From positions 124,001 through 188,000 of the IMG/VR virus record IMGVR_UViG_3300035070_002626: 64,000 nt of DNA; one strand, 5' to 3'. The translations under genes were made by a program, and so were the position numbers. The notes beneath the pieces were generated by a model. The model searched no databases. It saw only the letters and a program-made list of their open reading frames with translations, and had not been told where the DNA came from. This document shows positions 8,780 to 24,152 of the stretch, piece after piece (within the stretch, counting starts at the first letter, position 1; every line of letters begins with the position of its first letter).

Positions 8780-9061
8780 ATGGATAGCATGTTTAAATTA
8801 ATACAAGATGTAGGCTTTCCGATTGCAGCGGCGGGCGCATCTGGGTACTTGGTTTTCCTTACAATTAAATTCATTCTCGACGGAGTTACTGGTAGTGTAC
8901 AAACATTAGCAAACATTATTAAGCAATTAGACAACCGTGTGCAAACAATGAACAACGATCTTGTCAAGATCGACGCACTGATGAGTCATACATTAGGAGT
9001 AAGACCTAATGTTGATAGAATTGCTGCCAACGAAGGTAAAGAAGATGCACGAAGGGATTAA
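8780..9061 (+). CDS. YvrJ-like TM/coiled-coil protein, paralog 1
   Basis: VGFPIAAA motif, TM segment and coiled coil. Confidence 0.65.
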   Translation: MDSMFKLIQDVGFPIAAAGASGYLVFLTIKFILDGVTGSVQTLANIIKQLDNRVQTMNNDLVKIDALMSHTLGVRPNVDRIAANEGKEDARRD

Positions 9062-9063
9062 TA

Positions 9064-9381
9064 ATGAACAATTTTGCTGATTGGGTCAACCAATATGGTT
9101 TTCCAATTGTTGCCGCAGTCGGGCTAGGCTATTTTATCTATTATATATGGGTGTGGGCAACCACAAAAGTTAAACCTGTAATAAGTGCAGCTATGGGAGA
9201 TTTGATTGCATTAGTTGATAGAATTAGAATGTTAGACAACGATATGATACGATTAAACAGCAAGTTGTCAATGGTGCTAGAACATCAAAGTAAAATAGAC
9301 AAAAAGCGTAGAGAAGAACTAGAAGAAATAGTAGCAAGATACCAGAGTAAAAGCGAATCATTTAACAGCACTGGCAAATAA
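9064..9381 (+). CDS. YvrJ-like TM/coiled-coil protein, paralog 2
   Basis: YGFPIVAA motif; aligns with the preceding ORF (DNRVQTMNNDLVKI vs VDRIRMLDNDMIRL). Confidence 0.65.
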   Translation: MNNFADWVNQYGFPIVAAVGLGYFIYYIWVWATTKVKPVISAAMGDLIALVDRIRMLDNDMIRLNSKLSMVLEHQSKIDKKRREELEEIVARYQSKSESFNSTGK

Positions 9382-9680: not shown

Positions 9681-11720
9681 TTACTTTGTCTGTGCTATGA
9701 AAACGCCATTCCAGTCTGAAGGAAGGTCTTGTGTTTTCATATACTCGCATCTTTCAATCCACATGTCGTAATATTTTTCCATTTGATGATCAAAGTGGTC
9801 ATGTAACAAGCGACATTTATCAATAGCATCATCGAATCTCTGCGCACGATAATCTTCGTGCATTTGTATGTGTTTCTTCTGCGCATTACGCCATGCCGGG
9901 GCAGTATTGTCGAGAACTGTGTAGATAGTTAATCCAACTGATTTACCTTTTACTTGTAAATCATCTACTTTAAGATAGAAGAAGTCATCCTTTGTTGCTG
10001 CGTATGTTGTTTCGCCTACAAGTAACAGGCATCCGTATTCTTTACACTTGCTTTCTACTCTTGCTGCGGTGCTCACAGCGTCTCCAAGGACATCATATGA
10101 ATGACGTTTAGTACTTCCCATCTCACCAAGGTATCCCAACCCCGTGTTGATGCCAGCGCCCATACCAACAGCAGGACGGCCATCAGGTATAATAACTTCT
10201 TCATTAAACTTCTCCACTGCACGAAGCATGTCTAAGCCACACTGTACGGCGGTCTTAGCATGTTTAGCGTCATCTATAGGCGCATTATGTATGTGCATAC
10301 TAGCATCGCCGATGTATTTAATTATCATTCCGTCCGCATCAAGCACAGGTTGTGTAATGCTGTCCATGTAGCCGTTCATAATAGTTGTCAGACCTTTTAC
10401 ATCATCACCAAAACTTTCACCCAATGGAGTAAAGCCACGCAAGTCACTAAACACAATAGAGACTTCTTTCTTTTGCCCGTCTTTAATTAGACTTGGATTT
10501 TCTTGTAGCAGTTTAACCACTGTAGGCGATGCGTATCCAGCAAACTGTTTCTTGATTGCTTGTTTCTCTAAAAACTCTTGTACAAACTTAATGCCATATA
10601 CTTGCAATGCTATTATAATAAACACTATAACAGGTGCTGTAACGTCTAAAAGAAACTTATCAGTTGCGTATGCGTATATGCTGTAAGGTATAACTCCGAC
10701 TATCATTGTAACAGTTGTAGCAAGCCCAACCCACATCCAACGACTTAATAATATAAGCAATAATCCGCCTACTACTAGTGCAACAAGCTCTGCTGTTGGT
10801 GCCCAATTGGGACGTTGTATGTTTGTACCAGCAAACATAGTGCCTAGTACTGCGGCTTGTGTAGTGCCTGCATACTGCGCTCCCAGTGCCGTGGGAACAG
10901 GGTTAGCAATGCCTGCGGCAGTAACGTCTACAATAACTACTGCACCTCCTAGATCATTAGGTAAGTCTGCAACACTTACATTCTTGCTACGTTGACTCCA
11001 ATCAATCCACACTCTACCCTCGCTGTCTGTAGGAATAACACCAAACTTTGGTATGCGCATTTTTTCTATACCAAACTGATTTAGTTTAATTTGAAAGTTG
11101 GGATCACCTGCAATGACTCGTAATGTCTCGAGCGCCAAGCTTGGATATAATGTGCCGTTTACAACAGCAACAGTTGGCATACGACGAACCACACCATCTA
11201 TCTCTGGTTCAGTGCTTACAATACCTGCACCCACTGAATTGTTTTCAAGTTCTGATATATTAGCAATAATACCACCATATGGCAAGATACGATCTAAGTA
11301 CTGAGGTTGGATAATTGCTGCGCCCGGATTAATTGGTTCGTTTACAGTTTTGTTACTAGGACGGCTAGCAAGTATAACCGGATAGTCTAACATAGTATCA
11401 GCTAGGTATGCATCTCCACCTAGTCTATCCTCTTCAGGCATCATTACATTCCACACAACCAATCCAGCACCTCTGTCGTACAAGTCTACAATAATGTCTG
11501 CGTATATGTCTCGGGGGAAAGGATACTGTCCGTACAGTTCTAGTGCTGCTTCGTCTATCTCTGCAACATAGATATTATTCTCTACTGCTGGTTGATTTAC
11601 AATAAGCTGATCAAAATAATTTAATTTAATACTTTGTATAAAGTTATTAGGTACTGCAAATGCATACACTAATGCAGCCAGTGTAATCAATGCCCACCAA
11701 GGAGATAATAATCGTTTCAT
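9681..11720 (-). CDS. CHASE2-domain class III adenylate cyclase
   Basis: N-terminal TM; CHASE2 (EIDE..L..YGQYPFPR, DGVVRR, PSLAL); 3 TMs; cyclase motifs FSDLRGFT, KYIGDA, GINTG, YDVLGDAVSTAARVES, VKGK. Confidence 0.95.
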   Translation of the reverse strand: MKRLLSPWWALITLAALVYAFAVPNNFIQSIKLNYFDQLIVNQPAVENNIYVAEIDEAALELYGQYPFPRDIYADIIVDLYDRGAGLVVWNVMMPEEDRLGGDAYLADTMLDYPVILASRPSNKTVNEPINPGAAIIQPQYLDRILPYGGIIANISELENNSVGAGIVSTEPEIDGVVRRMPTVAVVNGTLYPSLALETLRVIAGDPNFQIKLNQFGIEKMRIPKFGVIPTDSEGRVWIDWSQRSKNVSVADLPNDLGGAVVIVDVTAAGIANPVPTALGAQYAGTTQAAVLGTMFAGTNIQRPNWAPTAELVALVVGGLLLILLSRWMWVGLATTVTMIVGVIPYSIYAYATDKFLLDVTAPVIVFIIIALQVYGIKFVQEFLEKQAIKKQFAGYASPTVVKLLQENPSLIKDGQKKEVSIVFSDLRGFTPLGESFGDDVKGLTTIMNGYMDSITQPVLDADGMIIKYIGDASMHIHNAPIDDAKHAKTAVQCGLDMLRAVEKFNEEVIIPDGRPAVGMGAGINTGLGYLGEMGSTKRHSYDVLGDAVSTAARVESKCKEYGCLLLVGETTYAATKDDFFYLKVDDLQVKGKSVGLTIYTVLDNTAPAWRNAQKKHIQMHEDYRAQRFDDAIDKCRLLHDHFDHQMEKYYDMWIERCEYMKTQDLPSDWNGVFIAQTK

Positions 11721-12064
11721 GTTTTCTTTCCCATTAGTTTTGCTCGCATTGCATCTAGCTCTGCATTTCGCTGTTGTTCTTCTACGCTGGTTTGATTGGA
11801 CGAGATTTGTACTCTGGGTTTGGTACGCCTGGTTTGTACTGTACTACTGGATTGTACTTTATTTTTTGTTTGTTGTTGAACCCGCGATGGCGATGAATTT
11901 CCAATTTCTTGTCGAAGTTGTTCAATTCGGTATTTGATGTCTTGGGTTGCACTTCCGTCATACTTTTTACTTGCTGAATTTCTAAGTTGCTGATCAACTA
12001 ATTGGTTGATATTCTTACTAAAGTATTTATTTAGGACCCATTTAATCATAGTGGTATTTAACAC
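11717..12064 (-). CDS. Hypothetical basic protein within the curli/cyclase operon
   Basis: Stop overlaps the cyclase start (ATGA); Q/K-rich. Confidence 0.6.
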   Translation of the reverse strand: MLNTTMIKWVLNKYFSKNINQLVDQQLRNSASKKYDGSATQDIKYRIEQLRQEIGNSSPSRVQQQTKNKVQSSSTVQTRRTKPRVQISSNQTSVEEQQRNAELDAMRAKLMGKKT

Positions 12065-12086: not shown

Positions 12087-13268
12087 TTAGTATTGCGATA
12101 CACTCATGCTGCATCCGCCTGGATTAACACATGTACTTGTTATTGAGTATGACTTTGCTGTACCACTGTATTGTTCTAAACTAAAGTTGTATGCTGGTCC
12201 GTTCACACTAGATAAATTTACAGTTGCACTGTGTCCGCCACTGCCATGTTGTAGTATATCAACCAAGTTACTGTCGCCTGTTAAGTCAAGGTCAAGGCTT
12301 ACAGTGTCACTGTTTCCTAGTTGCGCTGCTTCAACATTGTTATAGTCTCCGTCTACGTCAACATTCATTGTATGAGCACCGTTTTTACGTTGTGACAATT
12401 CTACATCATTATAGTCACCTTCAATGCTTGTGGTCATTTCATGTGATGCCCAACAACAGTTCTCGGCTTGGTCAGTTTGTGCTGAATGGTATGTGTTATT
12501 GTTGCCGGTAATAGTTACATATGCGTCGTGGTCACCGGCTTCTGTTGTATCAGTATAACCATCTAATTGTTTACCTTGCCATACTTTTATATTGTTGTCA
12601 TCACCGATTAATATTAGTCTACTGAAGTTGCTTTCGCCGTTGCCACCTTGATAACTATCCACTGTGTTGTCATTGCCCGTGATTGCTGCTTCTGTTTGTT
12701 CGTATTGTGATCCATTTTGTGTTACTGTGACTGTATTCCTGTCGCCAGTGATGGGTGTATCATTGTAGCCATACACCATATGATTATTACCGTCTTGATC
12801 TACAGTTATAGAGTTGCCATCACCGTCTGCTTTGACGTATGCTAGGTTGTTATCACCGTCTTGTGTAATGGTTGCAGTTTGATCAGTATCACCACCATCT
12901 CCTAGTCCTGCGTAGGCTAAATTAGAGTCGCCAGTTTGTGTAATATCAATTCTGCAGTTGCTACCATAACAATGTGAATACGCTTCGTTATCATCGCCTG
13001 TTTGTGTTGTGTTGTTTATTCCATTATCTGCGCTCATGTACACACCTATTAGATTGATATCTCCTGTTTGAGTGTATGTAGTGCTTGCATTGTTGCCACT
13101 AATAGTCGCTTTGCCATTGGTAGGCCATCCATCACTAACAACATTGTCAGTGCCATCTTGTGTAATAGTTAAGTCAGTGTTGTTGCCAACTTGGTTGATA
13201 TAGATTTCATTTGCATAACAGATTTGGCTAAAAAAACAAGTTATTATTGTTGCAATTATTAATTTCAT
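12087..13268 (-). CDS. Long curlin-repeat protein (CsgA/CsgB-like)
   Basis: Signal peptide, then about 15 repeats of N-x-A/x-x-I-x-Q-x-G-x-x-N. Confidence 0.88.
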   Translation of the reverse strand: MKLIIATIITCFFSQICYANEIYINQVGNNTDLTITQDGTDNVVSDGWPTNGKATISGNNASTTYTQTGDINLIGVYMSADNGINNTTQTGDDNEAYSHCYGSNCRIDITQTGDSNLAYAGLGDGGDTDQTATITQDGDNNLAYVKADGDGNSITVDQDGNNHMVYGYNDTPITGDRNTVTVTQNGSQYEQTEAAITGNDNTVDSYQGGNGESNFSRLILIGDDNNIKVWQGKQLDGYTDTTEAGDHDAYVTITGNNNTYHSAQTDQAENCCWASHEMTTSIEGDYNDVELSQRKNGAHTMNVDVDGDYNNVEAAQLGNSDTVSLDLDLTGDSNLVDILQHGSGGHSATVNLSSVNGPAYNFSLEQYSGTAKSYSITSTCVNPGGCSMSVSQY

Positions 13269-14395
13269 TATTGCCTCTGATTTATATCTATAGTGTTGTT
13301 ACCAGCACCTAATAGGTAATCATATACCACTTCGTCACCTTGTTGAATATTAATACGATACCCATATTCTTGCGATAACGTCAATCTCAAATAATTATTT
13401 ACATCTACACTGGTTCTTTGTACAACCCAATCATCATTTCCTATTTGTAGCGAGATTCGTGTTGTTTCGTCGTATCCGCCGAGCTGTTGTTCAAAAAACT
13501 GCGAGTTTTGTGTTTTAAGTTCGTCTCTAAACAATGCTGCAAGAGCTAAATTTAATTGATCTATCATGTCGACTAGTAGTTCACCTAAGTAATAGTCCAC
13601 ATTATGATCTAAATCTGTTATCCAAATATCTTTAATGCTTTCTACTAACACATCTTCGTCGAGTTCATCAAACTCTAGTGCATCGATGTCAAGAAACTCA
13701 AACATTTTTCGTGTACGTTTGCGTATTTGATCTTCTTCATCTGCTATAACTGTTCGCTTGCGTAGTATTAACAAGTTGTTGATTTGGTCTTCGTTTACAC
13801 TAATAATTACCGGCTTGCTTGGAAGTTTTCCACTGTGTGAAACTTGTGTTGCTTGAAATGCTTGATTCATTACAACAAAACCTTCGTCTGTTTCTACTTT
13901 GATTTCGCCTGTTACACAATAACCTGCACTATCACAGCTAGGCAATAGAGTAACCATTGAGCCACCAATTTCATCTACAACCATAATAAAGTCTGTACCA
14001 CGCACAGAGATAGTTGCACTTGGTGTGCGCACTCTTACGTTTTGTCTTGAGTTTTTAGCAATTTGTCCACTGGCATAACGAACAGTTCCTAAGGCAGCTC
14101 GCATGTCCAAACTGCCTTTGCCTGTGTTAGGGTCGTATACAAAGTCGTCAATTACTAGTATACTATTGTCAATAACATCTACTCTGGTATCGTCAATAAA
14201 ATCTAAACGCATTTTACCACGTTTGGTTCTGGCAGTATCCATTGATTCCAGCAGAGTGCCTTTTTCGCTGCCGACTACATTGCTCTCACGCACAATTTCG
14301 CCAGACCCATCAAGTTCAGTCACTGTGCCAATACTAGCACTCGTTTGCGAGACTGTAACTAAGAGGCTGATAATTGCAAAAGCGAATATTTTCAT
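13268..14395 (-). CDS. FecR-domain periplasmic protein
   Basis: Signal peptide; IGTVTELDG, IDDFVYDP, VRTPSATISVRGTDF, GEIKV motifs. Confidence 0.9.
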   Translation of the reverse strand: MKIFAFAIISLLVTVSQTSASIGTVTELDGSGEIVRESNVVGSEKGTLLESMDTARTKRGKMRLDFIDDTRVDVIDNSILVIDDFVYDPNTGKGSLDMRAALGTVRYASGQIAKNSRQNVRVRTPSATISVRGTDFIMVVDEIGGSMVTLLPSCDSAGYCVTGEIKVETDEGFVVMNQAFQATQVSHSGKLPSKPVIISVNEDQINNLLILRKRTVIADEEDQIRKRTRKMFEFLDIDALEFDELDEDVLVESIKDIWITDLDHNVDYYLGELLVDMIDQLNLALAALFRDELKTQNSQFFEQQLGGYDETTRISLQIGNDDWVVQRTSVDVNNYLRLTLSQEYGYRINIQQGDEVVYDYLLGAGNNTIDINQRQ

Positions 14396-14396
14396 A

Positions 14397-15116
14397 TTAA
14401 TCGCTTTGCGTTATATCTACGTCTTGACTGTCGCCGTTAAATGTTGCATCAATTGTGCTACCGTCCACACCACTTTGTGTGATGTTGTACGTGCTGCCGC
14501 CTCCGGTGATGTTCAAATTAACAGTATGCCCATCCAAGCTTGCACCGCCGCTGGTATTGATAGTAATTGCATTGCCTTCGTCGCTAGCAGCACTTGTAGT
14601 TGCCAATGACGATGAATTATCTGCGACTATCGAAATTCTACTGTCAACCCCGTTTACTGTTAAGTTAGTAATATTGTTATCACCGTCCATATCAAAAGTA
14701 ATAATGCCGCCGCTTGCGTCTGCTGATTCACCAATATTAAATGTATATGTGTTATCGTCGCCGTCACCATCAATATCTAATTTTACAGTTTCACAGTTAC
14801 CTGCACCTGCTGTTCCTAAACTAGCACAATTTAGTGTTACATCATTCGAGTCTCCAAAAAAGTCCCAAGTACCTGTGTAATTTGCTCCGTTGATTATAGC
14901 ATCAATGGTGTTAGTGTTACCTGTTTGGGTAATACTAAACGTCATATCGTCGCCGTTGATTGTAAAATTGGTCGCCTGTTGGCCAATTTCGTTGTCAGTG
15001 CCATCTTGTACCAAGTCTAGATCTAAGTTATCCCCAACTTGGGTAATGTAAATATCATTTGCCAGTGAGGTACTGGATATAAACAACAAAGATAATACAT
15101 ATAAAAGTTTTTTCAT
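14397..15116 (-). CDS. Curlin-repeat protein (CsgB/CsgA-like)
   Basis: Signal peptide (SLA-N), NDIYITQVG, repeated I-x-Q-x-G-x-x-N strands. Confidence 0.85.
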   Translation of the reverse strand: MKKLLYVLSLLFISSTSLANDIYITQVGDNLDLDLVQDGTDNEIGQQATNFTINGDDMTFSITQTGNTNTIDAIINGANYTGTWDFFGDSNDVTLNCASLGTAGAGNCETVKLDIDGDGDDNTYTFNIGESADASGGIITFDMDGDNNITNLTVNGVDSRISIVADNSSSLATTSAASDEGNAITINTSGGASLDGHTVNLNITGGGSTYNITQSGVDGSTIDATFNGDSQDVDITQSD

Positions 15117-15151: not shown

Positions 15152-15967
15152 TTATTTTTTAAATTTCCACATATTGCGCTTCTTACCCTCGAAAACCATT
15201 TCAATCACACCTTGCTCTATTGCTGCTCTTACTGCATAGTTAACTGGCTCATTAACACTATAACCAGTTTCGGCTTCTACAAGTTTTGTTCCTAAGTCGA
15301 AAAACTTAAAAATATCTGCACCCGATCTATAGCTTGCAATAGTCTTCTCAGTTGCTATGCTCATTAATACTTTACCAGTGCTAACGCTAACTAAACGCAT
15401 TACAACAGTTACAGTGTCTACTCTGTATTCTGTTTGCACACCGATACCTAAGTATCTTGCTCCTGCGCCTCCTACTGCTGTGTTGCTGTCATACCCAACA
15501 ATTCCCCCTTCAAGTATAAGCCCTGCAAACAACATTGGCTTCAACGGTGTAGGGCCGTTTGGAAGTTCTTTTTCGTACACTTCCCTCGTACTACGAATAA
15601 GTTGACGTTCTTTAATCAAATTATCCATACCTACACGCTCTACCACTTCAAACCAAACGCCATTACCTACATCTTGGAGTGCTTTAATAACCCATACTTC
15701 TGATCCTTGGGTTACTGCGCTCGACAAGTTGGCGATATTATCCGCCGGCTTACGCTGTCCTGTTGCATCTCTGAAACCGTAAACAGCGATTGTAATCTTT
15801 GGTCCATCTATTGCGGGGACCGCCGCAAGCCTATCTTCAATTGGACTAACTTGTACTATAGGAGATGTTTTACTATCTTCTAGAACTTGAAGGCTTTTGT
15901 TAGTTGCGCAGCCTTGTAATATTAGTACACTAAATCCAATTAGTAAAAACGTTTTTATCAGTTTCAT
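15152..15967 (-). CDS. csgG: Curli secretion channel CsgG
   Basis: Lipobox LQGC; AVYGFRDATGQRKP, SSAVTQG, WFEVVER, LIKERQLIR, EGGIVGYDSN, GARYLGIG, NEPVNYAVRAAIE. Confidence 0.96.
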   Translation of the reverse strand: MKLIKTFLLIGFSVLILQGCATNKSLQVLEDSKTSPIVQVSPIEDRLAAVPAIDGPKITIAVYGFRDATGQRKPADNIANLSSAVTQGSEVWVIKALQDVGNGVWFEVVERVGMDNLIKERQLIRSTREVYEKELPNGPTPLKPMLFAGLILEGGIVGYDSNTAVGGAGARYLGIGVQTEYRVDTVTVVMRLVSVSTGKVLMSIATEKTIASYRSGADIFKFFDLGTKLVEAETGYSVNEPVNYAVRAAIEQGVIEMVFEGKKRNMWKFKK

Positions 15968-16425
15968 TAGAAGTTAAACTCCCCGCCGCCGGGTATGCTA
16001 ATTTCTGTAGTTGTACCATCGTCGTCGACAATTGTTAACGTGATAGTTCCTGTTGTTGCGTCTTTAACCCAGGTTATATTTGCTCCTTCAATATCTGCTG
16101 TGCCTGTATTTGCACATGAGTCTCCGCAATTAGCAAACATAGCGTCTACCATTTGCTTACTTAGGTTAGCGTAGATTCTTGATTCCACGTTTCTAAGAAA
16201 CTTGTTTAGTGTTGTATTTTCAAGCTCGCGCTCTAAACGTGATGCCTCTGCCTCTGCCTTCTTTCGCAAGTCTTCACTGCGATTATGTTGTAACTGTTCT
16301 ACACTTAATACATGCGTAGAATATCCGTTTCCAAAATGAAACGCTGGAGATTTAAACCCCCAAACAAGATCAGCATTTGCTGACCCTGCAATTAACAGTA
16401 ATAAAACAGTGTATAAATTTTTCAT
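15967..16425 (-). CDS. csgF: Curli assembly protein CsgF
   Basis: Signal peptide, DLVWGFKSPAF..GNG N-terminus, C-terminal ITLTIVD..GTTTEISIP; directly upstream of csgG. Confidence 0.88.
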   Translation of the reverse strand: MKNLYTVLLLLIAGSANADLVWGFKSPAFHFGNGYSTHVLSVEQLQHNRSEDLRKKAEAEASRLERELENTTLNKFLRNVESRIYANLSKQMVDAMFANCGDSCANTGTADIEGANITWVKDATTGTITLTIVDDDGTTTEISIPGGGEFNF

Positions 16426-16442
16426 GGTCACCCTCTTATATG

Positions 16443-16541: not shown

Positions 16542-16769
16542 ATGACCGAGCAAGACGTATTTTTTAACACATTTGATGAGATGTGGACCGAGAAGGAAAT
16601 ACAACATGTTTATGCAGAAAATCTCAACGAACAGTTGGAAACTCTTGAACTAAATTGTATTGAAACTGCACTGCAAGCACACAACGGTAATCGCACAAAA
16701 GCGGCCCAGTTGTTAAACATAGGCCGCACTTGTCTGCTTGCTAAAATGAAAAAATATAATCTAGTCTAA
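16542..16769 (+). CDS. Fis-family helix-turn-helix protein (stand-alone HTH_8)
   Basis: LETLELNCIETALQAHNGNRTKAAQLLNIGRTCLLAKMKKY. Confidence 0.9.
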   Translation: MTEQDVFFNTFDEMWTEKEIQHVYAENLNEQLETLELNCIETALQAHNGNRTKAAQLLNIGRTCLLAKMKKYNLV

Positions 16770-17288
16770 ATGTTTCATTAATTCGTCAATGTTAACTGGT
16801 GTATAGTCAGTATGTTCTACGCACACACACCTATATGGCCCTTCCGGGCTTGGATTACTATGAATATGCCCGTGTATATTAAGTATAGACTGTTTGCTAA
16901 ATCTACTCTTTTGGGCTATTGTATCAGGATGCTGCGAAGTGTGCGATAGTAACAACTTAGGAAAGTTTACTTCCCACATCATAATATGTTCAAAATACGG
17001 TAAAAGAGTTTTAGGGTTGTCTCGATTGCCAATGACTAGACGTTTCTTTCCAGGTAACTTAGCAAAGTTAGCAGCTAGCCATTCAGACTGATTTTCGCCG
17101 CACACTACATCTCCCAGGTGGTATACAATGTCGTCGACTTTGACAGTATCGGCCCAGTTGTCCAACATTGCTTCGTTCATCTGCTTTACTGAATCAAAAG
17201 ACCTTATCAACGAACCAGAGGCATCAAAAAATCCTAGAAGAGGTTCGTCGTTAAAATGTGTATCACTGATTACCCATGTATCGGACAT
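16761..17288 (-). CDS. Calcineurin-like metallophosphoesterase
   Basis: SDTHF, HLGD, GNRD (canonical GNHD), SH, HGHIH. Confidence 0.88.
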   Translation of the reverse strand: MSDTWVISDTHFNDEPLLGFFDASGSLIRSFDSVKQMNEAMLDNWADTVKVDDIVYHLGDVVCGENQSEWLAANFAKLPGKKRLVIGNRDNPKTLLPYFEHIMMWEVNFPKLLLSHTSQHPDTIAQKSRFSKQSILNIHGHIHSNPSPEGPYRCVCVEHTDYTPVNIDELMKHLD

Positions 17289-17307: not shown

Positions 17308-17391
17308 TGGTACTCGCACCCGGACTCGAACCGGGACGCCCTACGGCCACAGATTTTAAGTCTGTTATGTCTACCATTCCATCATGCGAGC
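17308..17391 (-). tRNA. tRNA-Leu (TAA)
   Basis: GCTCGCA/TGCGAGT acceptor stem, ACAGA-CTTAAAA-TCTGT anticodon arm, long variable arm, GGTTCGAGTCC, encoded CCA. Confidence 0.95.
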
Positions 17392-17393
17392 GT

Positions 17394-17470
17394 TGGTGCT
17401 CCCGGTAGGACTCGAACCTACGACCGACCCGTTATGAGCGGGGCGCTCTAACCAACTGAGCTACAGGAGC
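17394..17470 (-). tRNA. tRNA with CAT anticodon, probably tRNA-Ile2 (lysidine) rather than Met
   Basis: GCTCCTG..TAGCTCAGTTGGTTAGAGC..CCCG-CTCATAA-CGGG..GGTTCGAGTCC..ACCA; lacks the initiator C1:A72 mismatch and GGG:CCC anticodon stem. Confidence 0.9.
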
Positions 17471-19554: not shown

Positions 19555-19860
19555 TTAACTTTCGGGCTCGATTTTAACTTGCAACGGATATCCATTAGCA
19601 CGGGCAAGTAGAGTAACTTCAATTCCTTTTTGTTCAGCCATTTCGTACGGCATAACTGCTACCACAGCTGATCCCGTTTCGTGCACGTTGAGTGTTAAAT
19701 TTTCCGCAGTTGCTTCGGTATAATTGAAAATATCAACTAGTGTGTGGATAACAAACTCATGTGAAGTTTGGTTGTCGTTAATGTAGATCAACTTAAACAA
19801 CGTTGGTTCTTTAAGAAAAATGTTTGTTTGCACTTTATTTTTTGTTTCGGTTTGGCTCAT
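19555..19860 (-). CDS. clpS: ATP-dependent Clp protease adaptor ClpS
   Basis: EP..FKLIYIND..T..EFV..L..IF, VHETGSAVV, AEQK, GYPLQVKIE. Confidence 0.92.
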   Translation of the reverse strand: MSQTETKNKVQTNIFLKEPTLFKLIYINDNQTSHEFVIHTLVDIFNYTEATAENLTLNVHETGSAVVAVMPYEMAEQKGIEVTLLARANGYPLQVKIEPES

Positions 19861-19937
19861 AACAATCCTTATTCTTTTATAGTGTATGCAGAGCAATAGC
19901 CACTCTGCATACTATTTTTATATACTTATCTTAGGAG

Positions 19938-20381
19938 TTAGGTTTCAACTGTTATGTCGATAACTTTTGGCTTCATTACTTCTGGAATAAGTCGCTCAAG
20001 GTCAATCTTGAGAATTCCATCTTTCAATGTTGCTGCTTTAACTTCTACGTAGTCTGCTAAGTTGAATGTGCGTACAAAAGGTCTAGTACTAATGCCCTTG
20101 TGCAGGAATTCACACTCATCGTCAGAATCTGTTTTTCCTGTAACTGTTAGTACCCCTTCTTTCAGCTCAACATTGATGTCCGCCATTTGAAAACCAGCTA
20201 CTGCCAGTCTGATGCGATAAGTTTCTTCTCCTGTGCGAAGAATATCATATGGGGGATAATTTTGCACAGCACCATTGGCTGTTGCTCTGTCAATGTTGTT
20301 AGTGATACGATCAAAAAGTTGATCAAATCCAACTGCGTTGCGATAAAATGGGGTGAGGTCTAGTGAGGTAAGTCTTGTCAT
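19938..20381 (-). CDS. Small heat shock protein Hsp20 (IbpA-like)
   Basis: VGFDQLFD, NYPPYDI, LAVAGF, FLHKGIS.R.F.R.F.L, GILKIDL, PE..KP..I. Confidence 0.95.
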   Translation of the reverse strand: MTRLTSLDLTPFYRNAVGFDQLFDRITNNIDRATANGAVQNYPPYDILRTGEETYRIRLAVAGFQMADINVELKEGVLTVTGKTDSDDECEFLHKGISTRPFVRTFNLADYVEVKAATLKDGILKIDLERLIPEVMKPKVIDITVET

Positions 20382-20442
20382 TTTGTTTCTCCTTTATAAA
20401 AGCAAGATTTAAAATTGTAGGTCCTGTTTAGCAACCTACAAT
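20382..20442 (-). ncRNA. ROSE-like RNA thermometer in the hsp20 5'UTR
   Basis: AUCUUGCU-UUUAUA-AAGGAGA hairpin occludes the SD; preceded by an AUUGUAGGU/ACCUACAAU hairpin. Confidence 0.7.
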
Positions 20443-20444
20443 AT

Positions 20445-20475
20445 TATTTATACACGATACAACCAACAATGTCAA
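20445..20475 (-). promoter_or_regulatory. Composite early/late promoter of hsp20
   Basis: TTGACA-N17-TATAAA in which the -10 box is also TATAAATA. Confidence 0.7.
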
Positions 20476-20484
20476 TATATCAAT

Positions 20485-22872
20485 TTACCATTTAATGCTA
20501 TATGATACTTCGGCTACGTTATTGCCTGTTTGGCTCATTGCTGCACCTAGTGTTATGTCGCCATTGTTGTATGCAGTAGTGTATTCAATTCTAGCATATG
20601 CATTTATATCTGATGGCATACCAAATTGTTGCTGTGTGTACTGTGTTGTTCCGTTGCTGTCAATACTAGTAGGAATACTTGTGCTAACGTTACCGCTGAG
20701 TGCAACTGGGTGTATACCTGCAAACGCTTGTAACCCACCGTCAGTATAGCTTGCTTCGGCCCACACTCCTGTTTGTGTCGAAACATTTGTAACCAATCCA
20801 GGTGTGATGTCTGTGCTCACATGCATTACGCTACCTGTGAATGCAAACTTGTCTTTAGCATAACTTGCAACGTTGTCGATAACTGTGCTACTCTTAACAT
20901 CGCCCCAAACCCCATTAAAATCTAACCAAGGATTGTTTTTCATATTTGTTGCATAGACACTGTAATCAAAGTTACCTACACTATACATACTATGCCCAAG
21001 TGATATTTCATTGGAATCAAGATTGAATCTAATTGTTGTATCGCTGTTTCCAAACGATACACTGCCATTATTTTGTAATGTGTTGTACATTGTGGTATTA
21101 CTGTTTACTGTAGATTGACTTAGATCAACTGTATAGCCTCGACCAATGGTGTCAGTTGCTACGCCGGATACTTCGCCAATGTTTAGTCCAGTGATGTTGC
21201 CACTTAGTGACGATCCGTTTAGTGACAATCCTCCCAATGGATTAAATGCCGATTTGATGTCGATGATATTGCCGCCTGCATATGTTGTGCCACTGGCTAT
21301 TAGTGCTTGTGTTGCATCGGCATCACTTAAATAATTCCACTCATCTTGCAACATGCTTTTAGCTGTGCCTGCTGCAATGGTTGATCCATCTATTTGGCTC
21401 ATAAACACAGCCATTTGTCTATCTGATCCGTTCATAAATGGTATGTATGTTACAAGATAATCATTACCATCGTCGCCTTTAAACACATTAACTGTGTTAC
21501 CACTACTGTTAGCACTACCACCATATGTATTTGTTGAATCAGTGATAAAATTTGTTAATGTGTTCTGATGTGCAGCAACATATTTGTTGTCTGATGTTTT
21601 AATCAAGAACTGATGGCTGTCATTAGCTCCACCAAAGTCTCCGCCAGACACTAGAATATCTTCTTTTCCGTCGCCATTAATATCGAAAAATTTGGGCTGG
21701 TATGTACTGTGACTGTTAGTGTTATATCCACTTAGAATGCTACTCGTAACATCGCTAAAGTCCCCAGTGCCGTTGTTTTGTAAAAACTGTATGTCACTAA
21801 ATTCTCGGAACACATCTGATGAACGAGCAAACACCATAACATCGTCGATGTTATCTTCGTTGAAATCGTAGTTAACTACACGCACCTGGTGATCAGTTCC
21901 AGTTACATTTGAACTTGCTGGCAAGTCTTTAACAAATGTGTATTCTACAACAGCTTCACCCTCTCGCGCATCCCAACCTTGCGGATTAGTAAAATCTACA
22001 CTGTACATCTTGGTTAAATTAGCACTGCTACATCCAGCTACGTTAAGATACGACAATGGGCAAGAAGCATCAGTTATAATGATTTCGTTGTTGCCGCCAT
22101 CTCCTAAGAAATTACCAATAGTTACACCTGAACCACCACTGCGAAGATGTCCGCTGTTATTCCATGGATCTATATATGTAGTAAACCCATCAATTGTATT
22201 GTTAAGAGCAATTGTTGTGTTTGGTCCATAATCTGTCATGATAATATCATCGTATGTGTCGTTGTTCAAGTCGCCGACATCACTATCATGTGACCATATA
22301 CCTACAGTGGGAATTGAAATTTTGGCAAAATTACTACCGTCATTACGAAATACATTTGCTGGACCATACACAACATTGTTATCGGTGCTGTGGCTTACAA
22401 ACATGTCATTTCGGCCTGTCTTAAAAAAGTCTGTAAACTCAATATCAGGCTCAGTGCCTAAGATTATATTATCATCACCGGAAAACCATTGAGATGTTTT
22501 ATCAACCAAACTGCCGTTTTCAAAACTCATTATGTTTATTCGACTGCTCACCCAATTGTTATAATCATTTGTTGCTGTCTGTCTACCAGCAAACACAATA
22601 TCGTCACTAGCTCCGTCTCCATCCAAATCGCTGATGTAGGAGTCGTATACAGAATATACACTAGTAGCACCGCCTGCTAGTGGATCAATGGTTCCTTGGT
22701 ATGTTGGAAGAGCATACAACCAAGCAATTGGACTAGGCGAAGGACTGCCCGGATTACTAGGAGTTGCCCCTGCTTGTGTTGCAGGCTGTCCGCCTCCACC
22801 TCCACCACCACATGCACTAAGAGCAGTGGTTGCTAGCAGGGCTGCTACAAGTTTAGGTCTTGCGTGTTGCAT
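20485..22872 (-). CDS. Lipoprotein with FG-GAP/VCBS repeats and a probable C-terminal beta-barrel (autotransporter-like)
   Basis: Lipobox LSAC followed by poly-G; DLDGDG..DIV, GDLNND..DII, DFNED..DVM, DINGDG.EDILV repeats; ends VSYSIKW. Confidence 0.75.
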   Translation of the reverse strand: MQHARPKLVAALLATTALSACGGGGGGGQPATQAGATPSNPGSPSPSPIAWLYALPTYQGTIDPLAGGATSVYSVYDSYISDLDGDGASDDIVFAGRQTATNDYNNWVSSRINIMSFENGSLVDKTSQWFSGDDNIILGTEPDIEFTDFFKTGRNDMFVSHSTDNNVVYGPANVFRNDGSNFAKISIPTVGIWSHDSDVGDLNNDTYDDIIMTDYGPNTTIALNNTIDGFTTYIDPWNNSGHLRSGGSGVTIGNFLGDGGNNEIIITDASCPLSYLNVAGCSSANLTKMYSVDFTNPQGWDAREGEAVVEYTFVKDLPASSNVTGTDHQVRVVNYDFNEDNIDDVMVFARSSDVFREFSDIQFLQNNGTGDFSDVTSSILSGYNTNSHSTYQPKFFDINGDGKEDILVSGGDFGGANDSHQFLIKTSDNKYVAAHQNTLTNFITDSTNTYGGSANSSGNTVNVFKGDDGNDYLVTYIPFMNGSDRQMAVFMSQIDGSTIAAGTAKSMLQDEWNYLSDADATQALIASGTTYAGGNIIDIKSAFNPLGGLSLNGSSLSGNITGLNIGEVSGVATDTIGRGYTVDLSQSTVNSNTTMYNTLQNNGSVSFGNSDTTIRFNLDSNEISLGHSMYSVGNFDYSVYATNMKNNPWLDFNGVWGDVKSSTVIDNVASYAKDKFAFTGSVMHVSTDITPGLVTNVSTQTGVWAEASYTDGGLQAFAGIHPVALSGNVSTSIPTSIDSNGTTQYTQQQFGMPSDINAYARIEYTTAYNNGDITLGAAMSQTGNNVAEVSYSIKW

Positions 22873-22899
22873 TAATGTCTCTCCTTAACTATTACATTA

Positions 22900-22927
22900 A
22901 GTATAACATCTCGTGCAGCAAAGTCAA
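22900..22927 (-). promoter_or_regulatory. Sigma70-type promoter of the lipoprotein gene
   Basis: TTGACT-N16-TATACT with extended TG. Confidence 0.65.
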
Positions 22928-22940
22928 CCGTTTTCTAGTG

Positions 22941-24152
22941 TTAGGCTGCTATTTTTTGTGGATTGTTTACTAACTCGGGTGTAATTTCAACTTGAGTTAT
23001 TTTACTGTTAGCATACTCTTTAAGACTGTACATATGCGGCATTAGAATTCTTTCCAATTCAGCTTGCAAACTACGTGCACCTGTTTTGCGTTTATGTGCA
23101 TGTTGTGCAATCTCACGCAATGCATCTACACTAAATGTTAATGCAACACCATCAGTTTCAAACAAGTATGTGTATTGTGCTACTAAACTGTTGCGTATCT
23201 CTGTGAGTACATATACTAGCTGATCTTCGGTTAATTGCTCAAGAGCTACATTGGTCGGAAAACGTCCTACAAATTCCGGAATTAATCCAAATTTTACCAG
23301 ATCGTCGGGCTCAATATCTCCTAGGCTACCAGGTGTGTTGTCTTTGATTGTAACACCAAAGCCGATACCCGAGTCAGACGATGCTCTACGTTTTACTACA
23401 TCTTCGAGTCCAACAAACGCTCCGCCTGCAATAAACAATATATTTTTAGTGTCTATTTCGATCATTTCCGCTTGTGGGTTTTTCCTACCGACATTGCCAG
23501 CTGGTACACGACAAATTGTGCCTTCTACTAGTTTAAGCAATGCTTGCTGCACACCTTCGCCACTAACATCGCGAGTGATCGACGAACTTTCACTTTTACG
23601 TGATATCTTGTCAACTTCGTCTAAAAACACAATACCTCTTTGTGCTTTTTCAACATCCCCGTCTGCTGAGTTTAGCAACTTACCGATTAATGTTTCGACA
23701 TCGTCCCCAACATACCCAGCTTCGGTAATAGAAGTTGCATCCGCAATTGCAAATGGCACATCTAAAAATCGTGCTACACTTTTTGCTAACAATGTCTTAC
23801 CGCAGCCCGTTGGCCCAAGCAATAGTATATTGGCTTTGTCTAATTCTATCTCTGTTGATGTATTATTAATTCTTTTGTAATGATTAGCAACTGCTACCGA
23901 AAGCACAACTTTTGCCATTTCTTGACCAATCACGTATTTGTCAAGGAATTCTTTTAGCTCGACAGGGTCTATGTCATTGACATTATTTGCATGTACTGTA
24001 TTACTTGCTAGCTCTTGTAGTAAGTCTCCACATAGATCCACACATTCATTGCAGATAGCAACATTGTCGCCAACTATGAGCTTTGTTACACTGTTTTTAT
24101 CCTTATTACAAAAATTACATTTTTCGTATGCTAACATGGTATCCTCGGTCAT
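22941..24152 (-). CDS. clpX: ATP-dependent Clp protease ATP-binding subunit ClpX
   Basis: CNFC...CNEC zinc finger, GPTGCGKT, AGYVG, FLDEVDK, RDVSGEGVQQALLK, IGF loop, TGARSL. Confidence 0.96.
   Translation of the reverse strand: MTEDTMLAYEKCNFCNKDKNSVTKLIVGDNVAICNECVDLCGDLLQELASNTVHANNVNDIDPVELKEFLDKYVIGQEMAKVVLSVAVANHYKRINNTSTEIELDKANILLLGPTGCGKTLLAKSVARFLDVPFAIADATSITEAGYVGDDVETLIGKLLNSADGDVEKAQRGIVFLDEVDKISRKSESSSITRDVSGEGVQQALLKLVEGTICRVPAGNVGRKNPQAEMIEIDTKNILFIAGGAFVGLEDVVKRRASSDSGIGFGVTIKDNTPGSLGDIEPDDLVKFGLIPEFVGRFPTNVALEQLTEDQLVYVLTEIRNSLVAQYTYLFETDGVALTFSVDALREIAQHAHKRKTGARSLQAELERILMPHMYSLKEYANSKITQVEITPELVNNPQKIAA

What the first reader, a model, noticed from the sequence alone, without database searches (positions are those of the whole stretch)
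12087..15116. FecR protein ends in a curlin-like strand shared with both curlins
Seen: the FecR protein ends ...YRINIQQGD...GNNTIDINQRQ; the curlins end DVDITQSD and MSVSQY; both curlins start their mature region with AN(D/E)IYI(T/N)QVG. Inference: the shared terminal x-(I/V)-x-Q strand and N-terminal motif could be CsgG-targeting or beta-templating signals. The FecR tail could then thread the pore or cap the fibre while its FecR domain contacts CHASE2, giving a physical signal relay.
Basis: partly seen in the sequence, partly recalled or inferred. Interest (0 to 1): 0.75.

Follow-up and report, generated by a model that had tools for sequence, protein, structure and literature searches.

The report
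Curlin-like end on phage FecR protein
A phage-borne curli (amyloid fibre) secretion gene cluster, already described in viruses of marine SAR11 and OM43 bacteria, encodes a secreted FecR-type sensor protein whose small, strongly conserved end domain faintly resembles, and may dock onto, the end of the fibre subunit, hinting at how fibre export could be coupled to cAMP signalling.

Summary
On the minus strand, 12087-15116 holds curlin-2, a secreted FecR-domain protein and curlin-1. They lie inside CsgF-CsgG-curlin1-FecR-curlin2-(small ORF)-CHASE2 adenylate cyclase, in a 300-kb T4-like virus record.

This module, including FecR and the cyclase, is already published for pelagiphages (PMC9599517). 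It is annotated in cultured HTVC008M and Melnitz.

What seems new is the FecR end:
- It is not a free tail. It is the last strand of a confidently predicted seven-strand beta domain (residues ~307-373).
- I-x-I-x-Q at the C-terminus is kept in 70/70 curli-linked FecR proteins down to 29% identity. It is absent from about 75 FecR proteins outside curli clusters.
- Profile comparison gives a modest, above-control likeness to the C-terminal unit of curlin-1 (P 1.4e-4, probability 53%).
- No Curlin_rpt match and no curlin fold match were found.
- A co-fold gave only weak support (0.54 against 0.00) for docking of the FecR end strand on the last two strands of curlin-1.

Best reading: a periplasmic adaptor that binds curlin and pairs with CHASE2. 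Pore threading or CsgG targeting is unlikely. The system is a known kind, with a modestly interesting and testable detail.

The parts
15967..16431 (-). CsgF homologue (154 aa), first gene of the type VIII secretion module
   Evidence: Pfam PF10614 CsgF, E 1.6e-12. Conserved in position in about 80 viral loci.
15152..15967 (-). CsgG outer-membrane lipoprotein pore (271 aa; lipobox LQGC)
   Evidence: Pfam PF03783, E 1e-49; NCBIfam CsgG, E 9e-55.
14397..15116 (-). Curlin-1 (239 aa), a divergent curlin with a signal peptide
   Evidence: The window copy has no Pfam hit. hhalign against the curlin-2 family gives probability 99.9%. 35-53% of members of its ESM Atlas clusters carry Curlin_rpt. GenBank annotates the homologue as a curlin-associated repeat protein in Melnitz and HTVC008M.
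15033..15062 (-). Curlin-1 residues 19-28 (ANDIYITQVG), the start of the mature protein and shared with curlin-2
   Evidence: N20, I22, Y23, Q26 and G28 are invariant in 39 relatives. The string is found only in the two curlins of the record.
14400..14570 (-). Curlin-1 C-terminal unit (residues 183-239), ending DVDITQSD
   Evidence: Conserved as GHT..L..TGGG....I.QSG..DN.ID.T..GD..DVDITQSD. It is the region aligned to the FecR C-domain. Residues 218-239 form the predicted interface.
13268..14395 (-). Secreted FecR-domain protein (375 aa): signal peptide, N-terminal FecR beta domain, acidic helical linker and C-terminal beta domain
   Evidence: Pfam PF04773 at residues 54-148, E 2.6e-7. AF2 model. 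Foldseek matches to 4m0n and 6ovk_R, E 1e-4.
13796..14332 (-). FecR N-terminal domain (residues 22-200)
   Evidence: pLDDT above 90. Fold of the PupR/FecR periplasmic signalling domain. Profile positions 19-92 match the RTX adhesin anchoring domain 5ix9, E 0.0026.
13490..13795 (-). Acidic, mostly helical linker (residues 201-302), low model confidence
   Evidence: pLDDT 40-68. It is poorly conserved: 6 of 102 columns are at least 90% identical. The first half of the C-domain (303-344) is the least conserved region.
13271..13489 (-). FecR C-terminal seven-strand beta domain (residues 303-375)
   Evidence: AF2 on 82 relatives gives pLDDT 93.7 and pTM 0.80. Its fold is found only in its own family.
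13271..13363 (-). The 'tail' (residues 345-375): last three strands, GY.IN..Q.. / ..Y.Y.LG.G / .N.I.I.Q..
   Evidence: Y346, Q352, G363, I369, I371 and Q373 are at least 90% conserved. Present in 70/70 curli-linked FecR proteins and 0 of about 75 others. Residues 365-375 lie in the predicted interface with curlin-1.
12087..13268 (-). Curlin-2 (393 aa), with the same N-terminal motif (residues 19-28 at 13185-13214) and ending CSMSVSQY
   Evidence: Pfam Curlin_rpt, E 2.5e-25, 4 stretches. It is present in most related loci but not all.
11717..12064 (-). Small 115-aa ORF between curlin-2 and the cyclase
   Evidence: No family match. Conserved in only a few loci.
9681..11720 (-). CHASE2 sensor fused to an adenylate/guanylate cyclase (679 aa)
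   Evidence: Pfam CHASE2, E 3.9e-30, and Guanylate_cyc, E 1.3e-18. It follows the module in most loci.
8780..9381 (+). Two small ORFs (93 and 105 aa) that travel with the module
   Evidence: Relatives lie just upstream of CsgF, or beyond the cyclase, in nearly all loci. No Pfam match. They are possibly the small 'histidine kinase' genes of PMC9599517; that identity was not verified.

Best explanation
The gene at 13268-14395 encodes a Sec-exported, soluble periplasmic protein of the pelagiphage-type type VIII (curli) secretion module. It has two working ends joined by a flexible acidic linker.

The N-terminal FecR-type beta domain is the half that, by analogy with the widespread FecR/CHASE2 gene pairs, talks to the periplasmic CHASE2 domain of the cyclase encoded downstream.

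The C-terminal 70-residue beta domain, ending in the invariant I-x-I-x-Q strand, is specific to curli-linked FecR proteins. It most likely binds the conserved C-terminal unit of curlin-1 by beta-strand packing.

The protein would then act in the periplasm as a curlin-binding adaptor. It would hold or cap subunits before or during export, a role for which the module has no CsgE, CsgC or CsgH. It would also report curlin load or export to the cyclase as cAMP.

Shown: gene order, domain architecture, conservation and specificity of the end domain, and a faint profile likeness to curlins.

Inferred: periplasmic residence, curlin binding (weak co-fold support only), CHASE2 contact and the cAMP relay.
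For: - The module and its order are conserved in about 80 viral loci, in cultured HTVC008M and Melnitz, and in a cellular Caulobacteraceae contig.
- The FecR gene always lies directly after curlin-1, with 1-nt spacing here, which suggests coupled translation.
- The protein has a signal peptide, no membrane helix and no anti-sigma domain.
- The N-domain has the FecR/PupR fold.
- The C-domain is predicted with pLDDT 93.7.
- The tail motif is present in 70/70 curli-linked and 0 of about 75 other FecR proteins.
- hhalign of the C-domain against curlin-1 scores 27.5 (P 1.4e-4, probability 53%) and aligns the two C-termini flush. Against curlin-2 it scores 24.9. The 100 column shuffles gave a mean of 8.8 and a maximum of 17.7; the reversed profile gave 11.8; other module proteins gave at most 17.2.
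- Tail-to-tail local scores average 27.9, against 21.0 for shuffled and 17.6 for FecR N-domain windows.
- Co-fold ipSAE is 0.54 against a best control of 0.00. The verdict is 'weak support': 58 of 80 solved pairs and 2 of 110 mismatches reach the mark, but at 0.60 or below only 7 solved pairs and both mismatches did. The interface is curlin-1 residues 218-239 with FecR 333-346 and 365-375.
- FecR genes next to CHASE2 genes occur in Pelagibacter, Omnitrophota, Methylocapsa and Geobacter genomes and in the Burkholderia biofilm operon (PMC5192318).
Against: - There is no Curlin_rpt hit on the FecR protein, even at E up to 1.
- HMM-to-sequence searches see no FecR-curlin likeness: the curlin-1 end HMM against FecR gives E 3.2, and the best non-self hit of the FecR C-domain HMM is CsgF at E 0.033.
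- The C-domain model matches no solved curlin or beta-solenoid structure. The best Z is 4.2, to CBM56 and Ig-like sandwiches.
- The co-fold pass lies in the score band that is 'more often wrong than right' unless the guess was likely beforehand.
- No lineage-specific co-variation of the two tails was found (permutation P 0.06).
- All curli-linked FecR proteins form one clade, so the perfect motif/context correlation counts as a single evolutionary event.
- CHASE2 contact and cAMP output were not tested at all.
Confidence: 0.4

Rival explanations
1. The C-terminal domain is a clade-specific docking or oligomerisation domain aimed at something other than curlin. Candidates are the periplasmic face of CsgG (a CsgE-like gate), CsgF, the CHASE2 domain or another copy of itself. 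On this reading its likeness to curlin ends is convergent, because both are Q/N/D/G/T-rich amphipathic beta strands.
For: - The curlin likeness is visible only at profile-profile level, with probability 53%.
- HMM searches place CsgF (E 0.033), not curlins, as the best non-self hit.
- The fold is a compact domain unlike any solved curlin.
- The module lacks CsgE (PMC9599517).
- The FecR N-domain resembles the RTX adhesin domain that sits at an outer-membrane pore (5ix9).
Against: - Curlins are the best-scoring module proteins against the C-domain, above CsgF, CsgG, the cyclase and all nulls.
- The co-fold with curlin-1 gave 0.54 against 0.00 for controls and used exactly the terminal strands.
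- The FecR gene sits between the two curlin genes in every locus.
Confidence: 0.3
2. The FecR protein is itself a CsgG substrate or fibre component. Its terminal strand is a CsgG-targeting or templating signal, so that the tail threads the pore or caps or nucleates the fibre outside the cell (CsgB-like) while the FecR domain stays in contact with CHASE2.
For: - All three proteins end in a hydrophobic-x-hydrophobic-x-Q strand.
- The G.G.N.I.I.Q segment recalls the curlin G-x-G-N-x-A-x-x-x-Q half repeat.
- A long flexible linker of about 100 residues could span a distance.
Against: - FecR lacks the N-terminal motif that is invariant in both curlins and lies where CsgA carries its targeting segment.
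- The end strand is buried in the strand order of a confidently folded domain.
- The N-domain is a folded beta domain of about 180 residues. Its Cys pair is invariant in close relatives, though some distant ones lack it. It cannot pass a channel of about 12.9 Å (diameter from PMC9004378).
- Curlins end in this strand simply because they are built of such repeats.
Confidence: 0.08
3. The protein is an iron-related regulator, as its name and the published discussion suggest, with no physical tie to curlins. The conserved end would be ordinary structural conservation.
For: It has the Pfam FecR domain. PMC9599517 discusses FecR in terms of ferric citrate regulation and iron limitation.
Against: - It has no anti-sigma domain and no transmembrane helix.
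- No ECF sigma factor or TonB-dependent transducer is found among the neighbours scanned.
- The cellular counterparts are FecR/CHASE2 sensor pairs, not FecIRA systems.
- The end domain occurs only in curli-linked members.
Confidence: 0.05

Closest known systems
Pelagiphage type VIII secretion (curli) module: HTVC008M-type myophages, HTVC023P-type podophages and OM43 phage Melnitz (PMC7029224, PMC9004378, PMC9599517)
   Same: It has the same genes in the same order: CsgF, CsgG, curlin, FecR-domain protein, second curlin, adenylate cyclase. FecR identity to HTVC008M and Melnitz is 43-45%, and those proteins have the same end strand. The record is T4-like, with a Gp23 capsid.
   Different: The record is about twice as long (299,910 bases, estimated 86% complete) as those phages (141-147 kb). 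The papers treat FecR as a putative iron or regulatory protein. They do not mention CHASE2 or the C-terminal domain, as far as term searches of the three papers show.
FecR/CHASE2 periplasmic sensor pairs of bacteria, for example the LysM-FecR protein plus CHASE2 histidine kinase of the Burkholderia biofilm-regulating operon (PMC5192318)
   Same: A signal-peptide FecR-domain protein is encoded beside a CHASE2 transmembrane signalling protein.
   Different: Those FecR proteins have other C-terminal parts and none ends in the I-x-I-x-Q domain. They are not linked to CsgG or CsgF.
FecR/PupR anti-sigma regulators of cell-surface signalling (structures 6ovk, 4m0n)
   Same: The fold of the periplasmic domain is shared.
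   Different: This protein has no cytoplasmic anti-sigma domain and no membrane helix. No sigma factor or TonB-dependent partner was found nearby.
Curlin subunits CsgA/CsgB and the periplasmic curli accessory proteins CsgE, CsgC and CsgH
   Same: The end of FecR has a G.G.N.I.I.Q strand-loop-strand pattern and a weak profile likeness to curlin ends. The proposed role, binding unpolymerised subunits in the periplasm, is what CsgE, CsgC and CsgH do. That last point rests on established knowledge, not on a test here.
   Different: FecR has no Curlin_rpt match, no solenoid fold match and no sequence likeness to CsgE, CsgC or CsgH.
N-terminal retention (cell-surface anchoring) domain of RTX adhesins such as MpIBP (5ix9)
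   Same: The first 70 or so residues of the FecR N-domain match it in sequence profile (E 0.0026) and fold (TM 0.71, 27% identity).
   Different: The match concerns the N-domain, not the tail. That domain belongs to type I secretion, and nothing here shows a pore-plugging role.

Membership tests
Pelagiphage / alphaproteobacterial-type T8SS module with FecR and adenylate cyclase (PMC9599517) | Gene order CsgF-CsgG-curlin-FecR-(second curlin)-adenylate cyclase | tested here: met
Pelagiphage / alphaproteobacterial-type T8SS module with FecR and adenylate cyclase (PMC9599517) | Carried by a T4-like (Kyanoviridae-type) phage genome | tested here: met
   The record is classed as a virus record. It has a Gp23 capsid hit, E 2.8e-100, phage-type replication genes, and homologues in HTVC008M and Melnitz.
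Pelagiphage / alphaproteobacterial-type T8SS module with FecR and adenylate cyclase (PMC9599517) | Absence of CsgE, CsgC and CsgD | tested here: met
   No such Pfam or NCBIfam hits were found among the module and neighbouring ORFs scanned.
FecR/PupR anti-sigma regulators | Periplasmic FecR domain (PF04773) and its fold | tested here: met
   E 2.6e-7; 4m0n, 6ovk_R, E 1e-4.
FecR/PupR anti-sigma regulators | Cytoplasmic anti-sigma domain followed by one membrane helix | tested here: not met
   The protein starts with a 20-residue signal peptide and the FecR domain begins at about residue 22. The model shows no other hydrophobic helix.
FecR/PupR anti-sigma regulators | Adjacent ECF sigma factor and TonB-dependent transducer | tested here: not met
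   None was found among the ORFs scanned between 1303 and 55632. Not every small ORF was scanned.
Curlin (CsgA/CsgB, Pfam Curlin_rpt), asked of the FecR C-terminal domain | Match to the Curlin_rpt profile | tested here: not met
   No hit for the whole protein at E up to 0.1, nor for residues 190-375 at E up to 1. The curlin-1 end HMM against FecR gives E 3.2.
Curlin (CsgA/CsgB, Pfam Curlin_rpt), asked of the FecR C-terminal domain | Strand-loop-strand repeat with conserved Q and G-x-G-N loop | tested here: inconclusive
   There is one such unit (G363.G365.N367.I369.I371.Q373), preceded by I.I.Q352. hhalign against curlin-1 gives P 1.4e-4 and probability 53%, above all controls.
Curlin (CsgA/CsgB, Pfam Curlin_rpt), asked of the FecR C-terminal domain | Beta-solenoid fold | tested here: inconclusive
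   The confident model matches no solved curlin or solenoid. Two- and three-residue turns argue for hairpins. Coordinates could not be inspected.
Curlin (CsgA/CsgB, Pfam Curlin_rpt), asked of the FecR C-terminal domain | Conserved N-terminal segment of the mature protein, as in both phage curlins | tested here: not met
   The motif is found only in the two curlins. Mature FecR starts SIGTVTEL.
FecR/CHASE2 sensor pair | Secreted FecR-domain protein encoded near a CHASE2 membrane protein | tested here: met
FecR/CHASE2 sensor pair | Physical contact between the FecR domain and the CHASE2 domain | not tested
No experiment on this contact was found in the papers searched.

The most novel reading that the evidence does not exclude
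The FecR C-terminal domain is a curlin-derived cap. It pairs strand-to-strand with the C-terminal unit of curlin subunits in the periplasm. Through the FecR domain and CHASE2 it turns the state of amyloid export into a cAMP signal. This would be a built-in amyloid-subunit sensor and chaperone that replaces CsgE and CsgC in the alphaproteobacterial and phage type of curli system.
Probability: 0.25. Interest if true: 0.7.

Novelty: new member of a known kind. Interest (0 to 1): 0.42.

Why it matters
Phage curli modules are among the most widespread auxiliary gene sets of SAR11 and OM43 viruses. Their function is an acknowledged puzzle (PMC7029224, PMC9004378, PMC9599517).

The FecR and cyclase genes have so far been linked to curli only by position. 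A conserved, curli-specific end domain on FecR gives the first concrete, testable physical link between the fibre subunits and the signalling half of the module. It faintly resembles curlin-1 and may dock on its end.

It also argues against reading this FecR as an iron regulator.

The same domain occurs in a cellular Caulobacteraceae curli locus. Any mechanism found would therefore apply to the CsgE-less curli systems of Alphaproteobacteria too.

Cultured phages (HTVC008M, Melnitz) carry the same feature, so ordinary biochemistry can settle the question.

Tried and rejected
1. The ESM Atlas shape search returned viral 'hypothetical proteins' of 234-246 aa at TM 0.72-0.82. They looked like curlin-1. 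A feature search with FecR residues 138-375 hit the same 246-aa, 88-member cluster first. For that row, and probably for the other two, the matches are FecR fragments, not curlins. The lead was dropped.

2. Foldseek and VIA-align searches with the C-domain model against PDB, the AlphaFold DB clusters and BFVD found only its own family, or nothing.

3. Profiles of the C-domain and of curlin-1 against PDB sequences gave nothing significant.

4. HMM-to-sequence searches between the FecR C-domain and the curlins gave no signal.

5. Lineage-specific co-variation of the FecR and curlin-1 tails, tested by permuting the pairing over 31 lineages, gave P 0.06. This is not significant.

6. The cyclase also ends in F-I-A-Q-T-K, but the Q is T in relatives, so this is a coincidence.

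7. The genome search 'relatives' is not available for a virus record.

8. The co-fold gave 'weak support'. It is reported only with its control and calibration counts, and it does not establish binding.
Full report
**What is there.** The window is bases 124001-188000 of a 299,910-base IMG/VR virus record, estimated 86% complete.
- The record has a T4-type major capsid gene (Gp23, E 2.8e-100).
- The window carries ribonucleotide reductase, a DnaB-like helicase, ClpX, UvdE and many ORFs without a family, nearly all on the minus strand.

The finding's coordinates enclose three minus-strand genes:

| Gene | Coordinates | Length |
|---|---|---|
| Curlin-1 | 14397-15116 | 239 aa |
| FecR-domain protein | 13268-14395 | 375 aa |
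| Curlin-2 | 12087-13268 | 393 aa |

They lie inside a longer row of genes:
- CsgF (15967-16431, PF10614, E 1.6e-12)
- CsgG (15152-15967, PF03783, E 1e-49)
- curlin-1, FecR (PF04773, E 2.6e-7) and curlin-2 (Curlin_rpt, E 2.5e-25)
- a 115-aa ORF
- a CHASE2 adenylate/guanylate cyclase (9681-11720)

**The observation.** The N-terminal AN(D/E)IYI(T/N)QVG occurs only in the two curlins among 346 ORFs of the record.

On a single sequence the C-terminal [IV]xQ is weak. Nine of 346 proteins have it. The cyclase's copy is a coincidence, because its Q is T in relatives.

Comparative data change the picture:
- 176 viral contigs encode relatives. The 80 loci kept and about a dozen contigs filed in MAGs keep the order (two small ORFs)-CsgF-CsgG-curlin1-FecR-curlin2-cyclase wherever the contig reaches far enough.
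- All 70 unique FecR proteins from these loci, down to 29% identity, end in [LIVMF]x[LIVMF]xQ plus 0-4 residues.
- Y346, Q352, G363, I369, I371 and Q373 are among the few columns of the C-terminal half that are at least 90% conserved.
- None of about 75 FecR-domain proteins from bacterial loci without CsgG or CsgF has this end.
- The 50%-identity representatives show the same ending, even where the middle of the protein no longer aligns.

**What the 'tail' is.** AlphaFold2 on 30 relatives gives three parts:
- a confident N-domain (residues 22-200)
- a low-confidence acidic helical linker (about 205-302)
- a C-terminal beta region

Modelled alone with 82 relatives, residues 303-375 form seven strands joined by turns of 2-6 residues, at pLDDT 93.7 and pTM 0.80. 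The quoted end is therefore strands 5-7 of a compact domain, not a loose tail.

The N-domain has the fold of the periplasmic domain of FecR/PupR anti-sigma factors (4m0n and 6ovk_R, E 1e-4). The protein has only a signal peptide before that domain, with no anti-sigma domain and no membrane helix.

The C-domain fold matched nothing outside its own family:
- Foldseek against PDB gave E of 0.18 or worse.
- VIA-align against 48,161 chains gave a best Z of 4.2, to CBM56 and Ig-like sandwiches.
- AlphaFold DB clusters, BFVD and the ESM Atlas returned only FecR proteins or FecR fragments.

**Is it curlin-like?** By family membership it is not. There is no Curlin_rpt match, even at E up to 1, and HMM-to-sequence searches see nothing.

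At profile-profile level there is a modest, specific signal:

| Comparison | Score |
|---|---|
| C-domain vs curlin-1 family (P 1.4e-4, probability 53%) | 27.5 |
| C-domain vs curlin-2 family | 24.9 |
| 100 column shuffles | mean 8.8, max 17.7 |
| Reversed profile | 11.8 |
| C-domain vs CsgF | 17.2 |
| C-domain vs CsgG | 11.1 |
| C-domain vs cyclase | 12.2 |
| FecR N-domain vs curlins | about 14 |
| Curlin-1 vs curlin-2 | 218 |

- The curlin-1 alignment pairs FecR 322-375 with curlin-1 183-239, so both C-termini end flush.
- Over 31 lineages, tail-to-tail local scores average 27.9, against 21.0 for shuffled tails, 23.7 reversed and 17.6 for N-domain windows. Same-locus pairs do not beat cross-locus pairs (P 0.06), so there is likeness but no detectable co-variation.
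- Distant lineages make the likeness visible by eye. In L082 and L092 both proteins end with a φxφxQ(S/D)G strand and, about 20 residues on, a φxφxQ strand.

**Do they touch?** One co-fold was run, of mature curlin-1 with the FecR C-domain, each with its own alignment.
- ipSAE was 0.54, 0.53 and 0.58, against 0.00 in three controls. The tool's verdict is 'weak support'.
- 58 of 80 solved complexes and 2 of 110 mismatches reach the mark. At 0.60 or below, only 7 of the solved ones and both mismatches did.
- The confident interface is curlin-1 residues 218-239, its last two strands, against FecR 333-346 and 365-375, which includes the terminal strand.

It does not establish binding.

**Context in what is known.**
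- The phage curli module was reported for pelagimyophages (PMC7029224) and for the OM43 phage Melnitz (PMC9004378).
- PMC9599517 explicitly lists small histidine-kinase genes, CsgF, CsgG, CsgA/B, FecR, a second CsgA/B and an adenylate cyclase in podo- and myophages of SAR11. It infers an alphaproteobacterial origin and discusses FecR as an iron-related regulator.
- GenBank already annotates a 'FecR domain protein' between two 'curlin associated repeat proteins' in Melnitz. In HTVC008M that gene and the second curlin are labelled 'hypothetical protein', after a 'curlin-associated protein'. Their FecR proteins are 43-45% identical to this one and end the same way.
- Term searches of those papers found no mention of CHASE2, and the FecR passages shown do not mention its C-terminal domain.
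- A Caulobacteraceae contig with ordinary cellular flanks carries the same row, including a FecR with the same end. A further alphaproteobacterial contig has curlin-FecR-curlin beside transposases.
- Separately, secreted FecR-domain proteins next to CHASE2 sensors are common in bacteria, including Pelagibacter, with cyclase or SpoIIE outputs. PMC5192318 describes such a pair with a CHASE2 histidine kinase. Those FecR proteins lack the end domain.

**Mechanism.** The most economical reading has three parts.
- The module joins a curli cassette to a FecR/CHASE2 sensor cassette.
- The FecR protein is the joint. Its N-domain would serve CHASE2; this rests on neighbourhood only.
- Its curli-specific C-domain would serve the curlins; this rests on specificity, faint homology and a weak co-fold.

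FecR is probably periplasmic, for four reasons:
- It has a Sec signal peptide.
- It has a folded beta N-domain with a Cys pair (C154, C160) that is invariant in close relatives and absent in some distant ones.
- It lacks the curlin N-terminal motif.
- The CsgG channel is about 1.3 nm wide (PMC9004378).

It would therefore meet curlin in the periplasm. Acting as a holder or cap there would fill the place of the missing CsgE, CsgC and CsgH, and could gate cAMP synthesis. I put this at about 0.4.

Rivals:
- Docking on CsgG, CsgF, CHASE2 or itself, with convergent likeness to curlin (0.3).
- An iron regulator unrelated to curlins (0.05).

**Verdict.** The system is a new member of a published kind, with one apparently undescribed and testable detail.

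Noticed in passing
whole record (window = bases 124001-188000 of 299,910): The record is a T4-like virus (Gp23 capsid hit). It is about twice the size of the cultured curli-carrying phages HTVC008M and Melnitz (141-147 kb), and is still estimated to be only 86% complete.
   Followed up: partly
window 19555-24152 (-): Proteostasis genes lie just upstream of the amyloid module: ClpS (19555-19896), Hsp20 (19938-20381), a 795-aa FG-GAP repeat protein and ClpX (22941-24152). Relatives of the Hsp20 and ClpS genes lie about 3 kb upstream of CsgF in a subset of related loci, for example L002, L026, L030, L053 and L089.
   Followed up: partly
window 16761-17288 (-); L082 4661-5179; L094 3779-4639: A calcineurin-like metallophosphoesterase is encoded just upstream of CsgF here and in L082. 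Another, not closely related, lies in the same place in the cellular Caulobacteraceae locus. Given the cyclase in the module, a cyclic-nucleotide phosphodiesterase role is worth testing.
   Followed up: no
window 14120-14332 (-), FecR residues about 22-92: The first part of the FecR N-domain matches the N-terminal cell-surface anchoring (retention) domain of the RTX adhesin MpIBP, 5ix9. The profile E is 0.0026, and Foldseek gives TM 0.71 with 27% identity. In RTX adhesins that domain sits at the type I outer-membrane pore.
   Followed up: partly
window 15967-16431 (-), CsgF C-terminus: The phage CsgF proteins end in an aromatic motif (GEFNF, GFGF or similar) that resembles the C-terminal signature of outer-membrane beta-barrel proteins. 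The FecR C-domain HMM's best non-self hit in the record is this CsgF (E 0.033).
   Followed up: no
window 14397-15116 and 12087-13268 (-): Both curlins carry conserved cysteines: C97 and C108 are invariant in curlin-1, and curlin-2 has a C(x6)C pair (TCVNPGGC here) just before its end. To my knowledge E. coli CsgA has no cysteines, so disulfides may be a feature of this curlin type.
   Followed up: no
window 8780-9381 (+): Two small ORFs (93 and 105 aa, no Pfam match) co-occur with the module in nearly all loci, usually just upstream of CsgF. Here they lie beyond the cyclase on the other strand. They may be the 'histidine kinase' genes of PMC9599517, which my scans could not confirm.
   Followed up: partly
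window 17308-17470 (-): tRNA-Leu(TAA) and tRNA-Met(CAT) genes sit between the metallophosphoesterase gene and the next block.
   Followed up: no
L085-L093 (genome-contig hits): Contigs carrying the phage-type module are filed in MAGs of unrelated taxa: Rhodobacteraceae, Legionellales, Pirellulales, Polynucleobacter, Pelagibacter and Flavobacteriaceae. The inconsistent taxonomy suggests viral contigs that were mis-binned.
   Followed up: no
L102, L104, L107 (Pelagibacter isolates HIMB1506, HIMB1495, HIMB1485): SAR11 genomes themselves encode a CHASE2-SpoIIE phosphatase beside large FecR-domain proteins (493-895 aa). The likely host clade therefore has its own FecR/CHASE2 pair, which the phage proteins might cross-talk with.
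   Followed up: no
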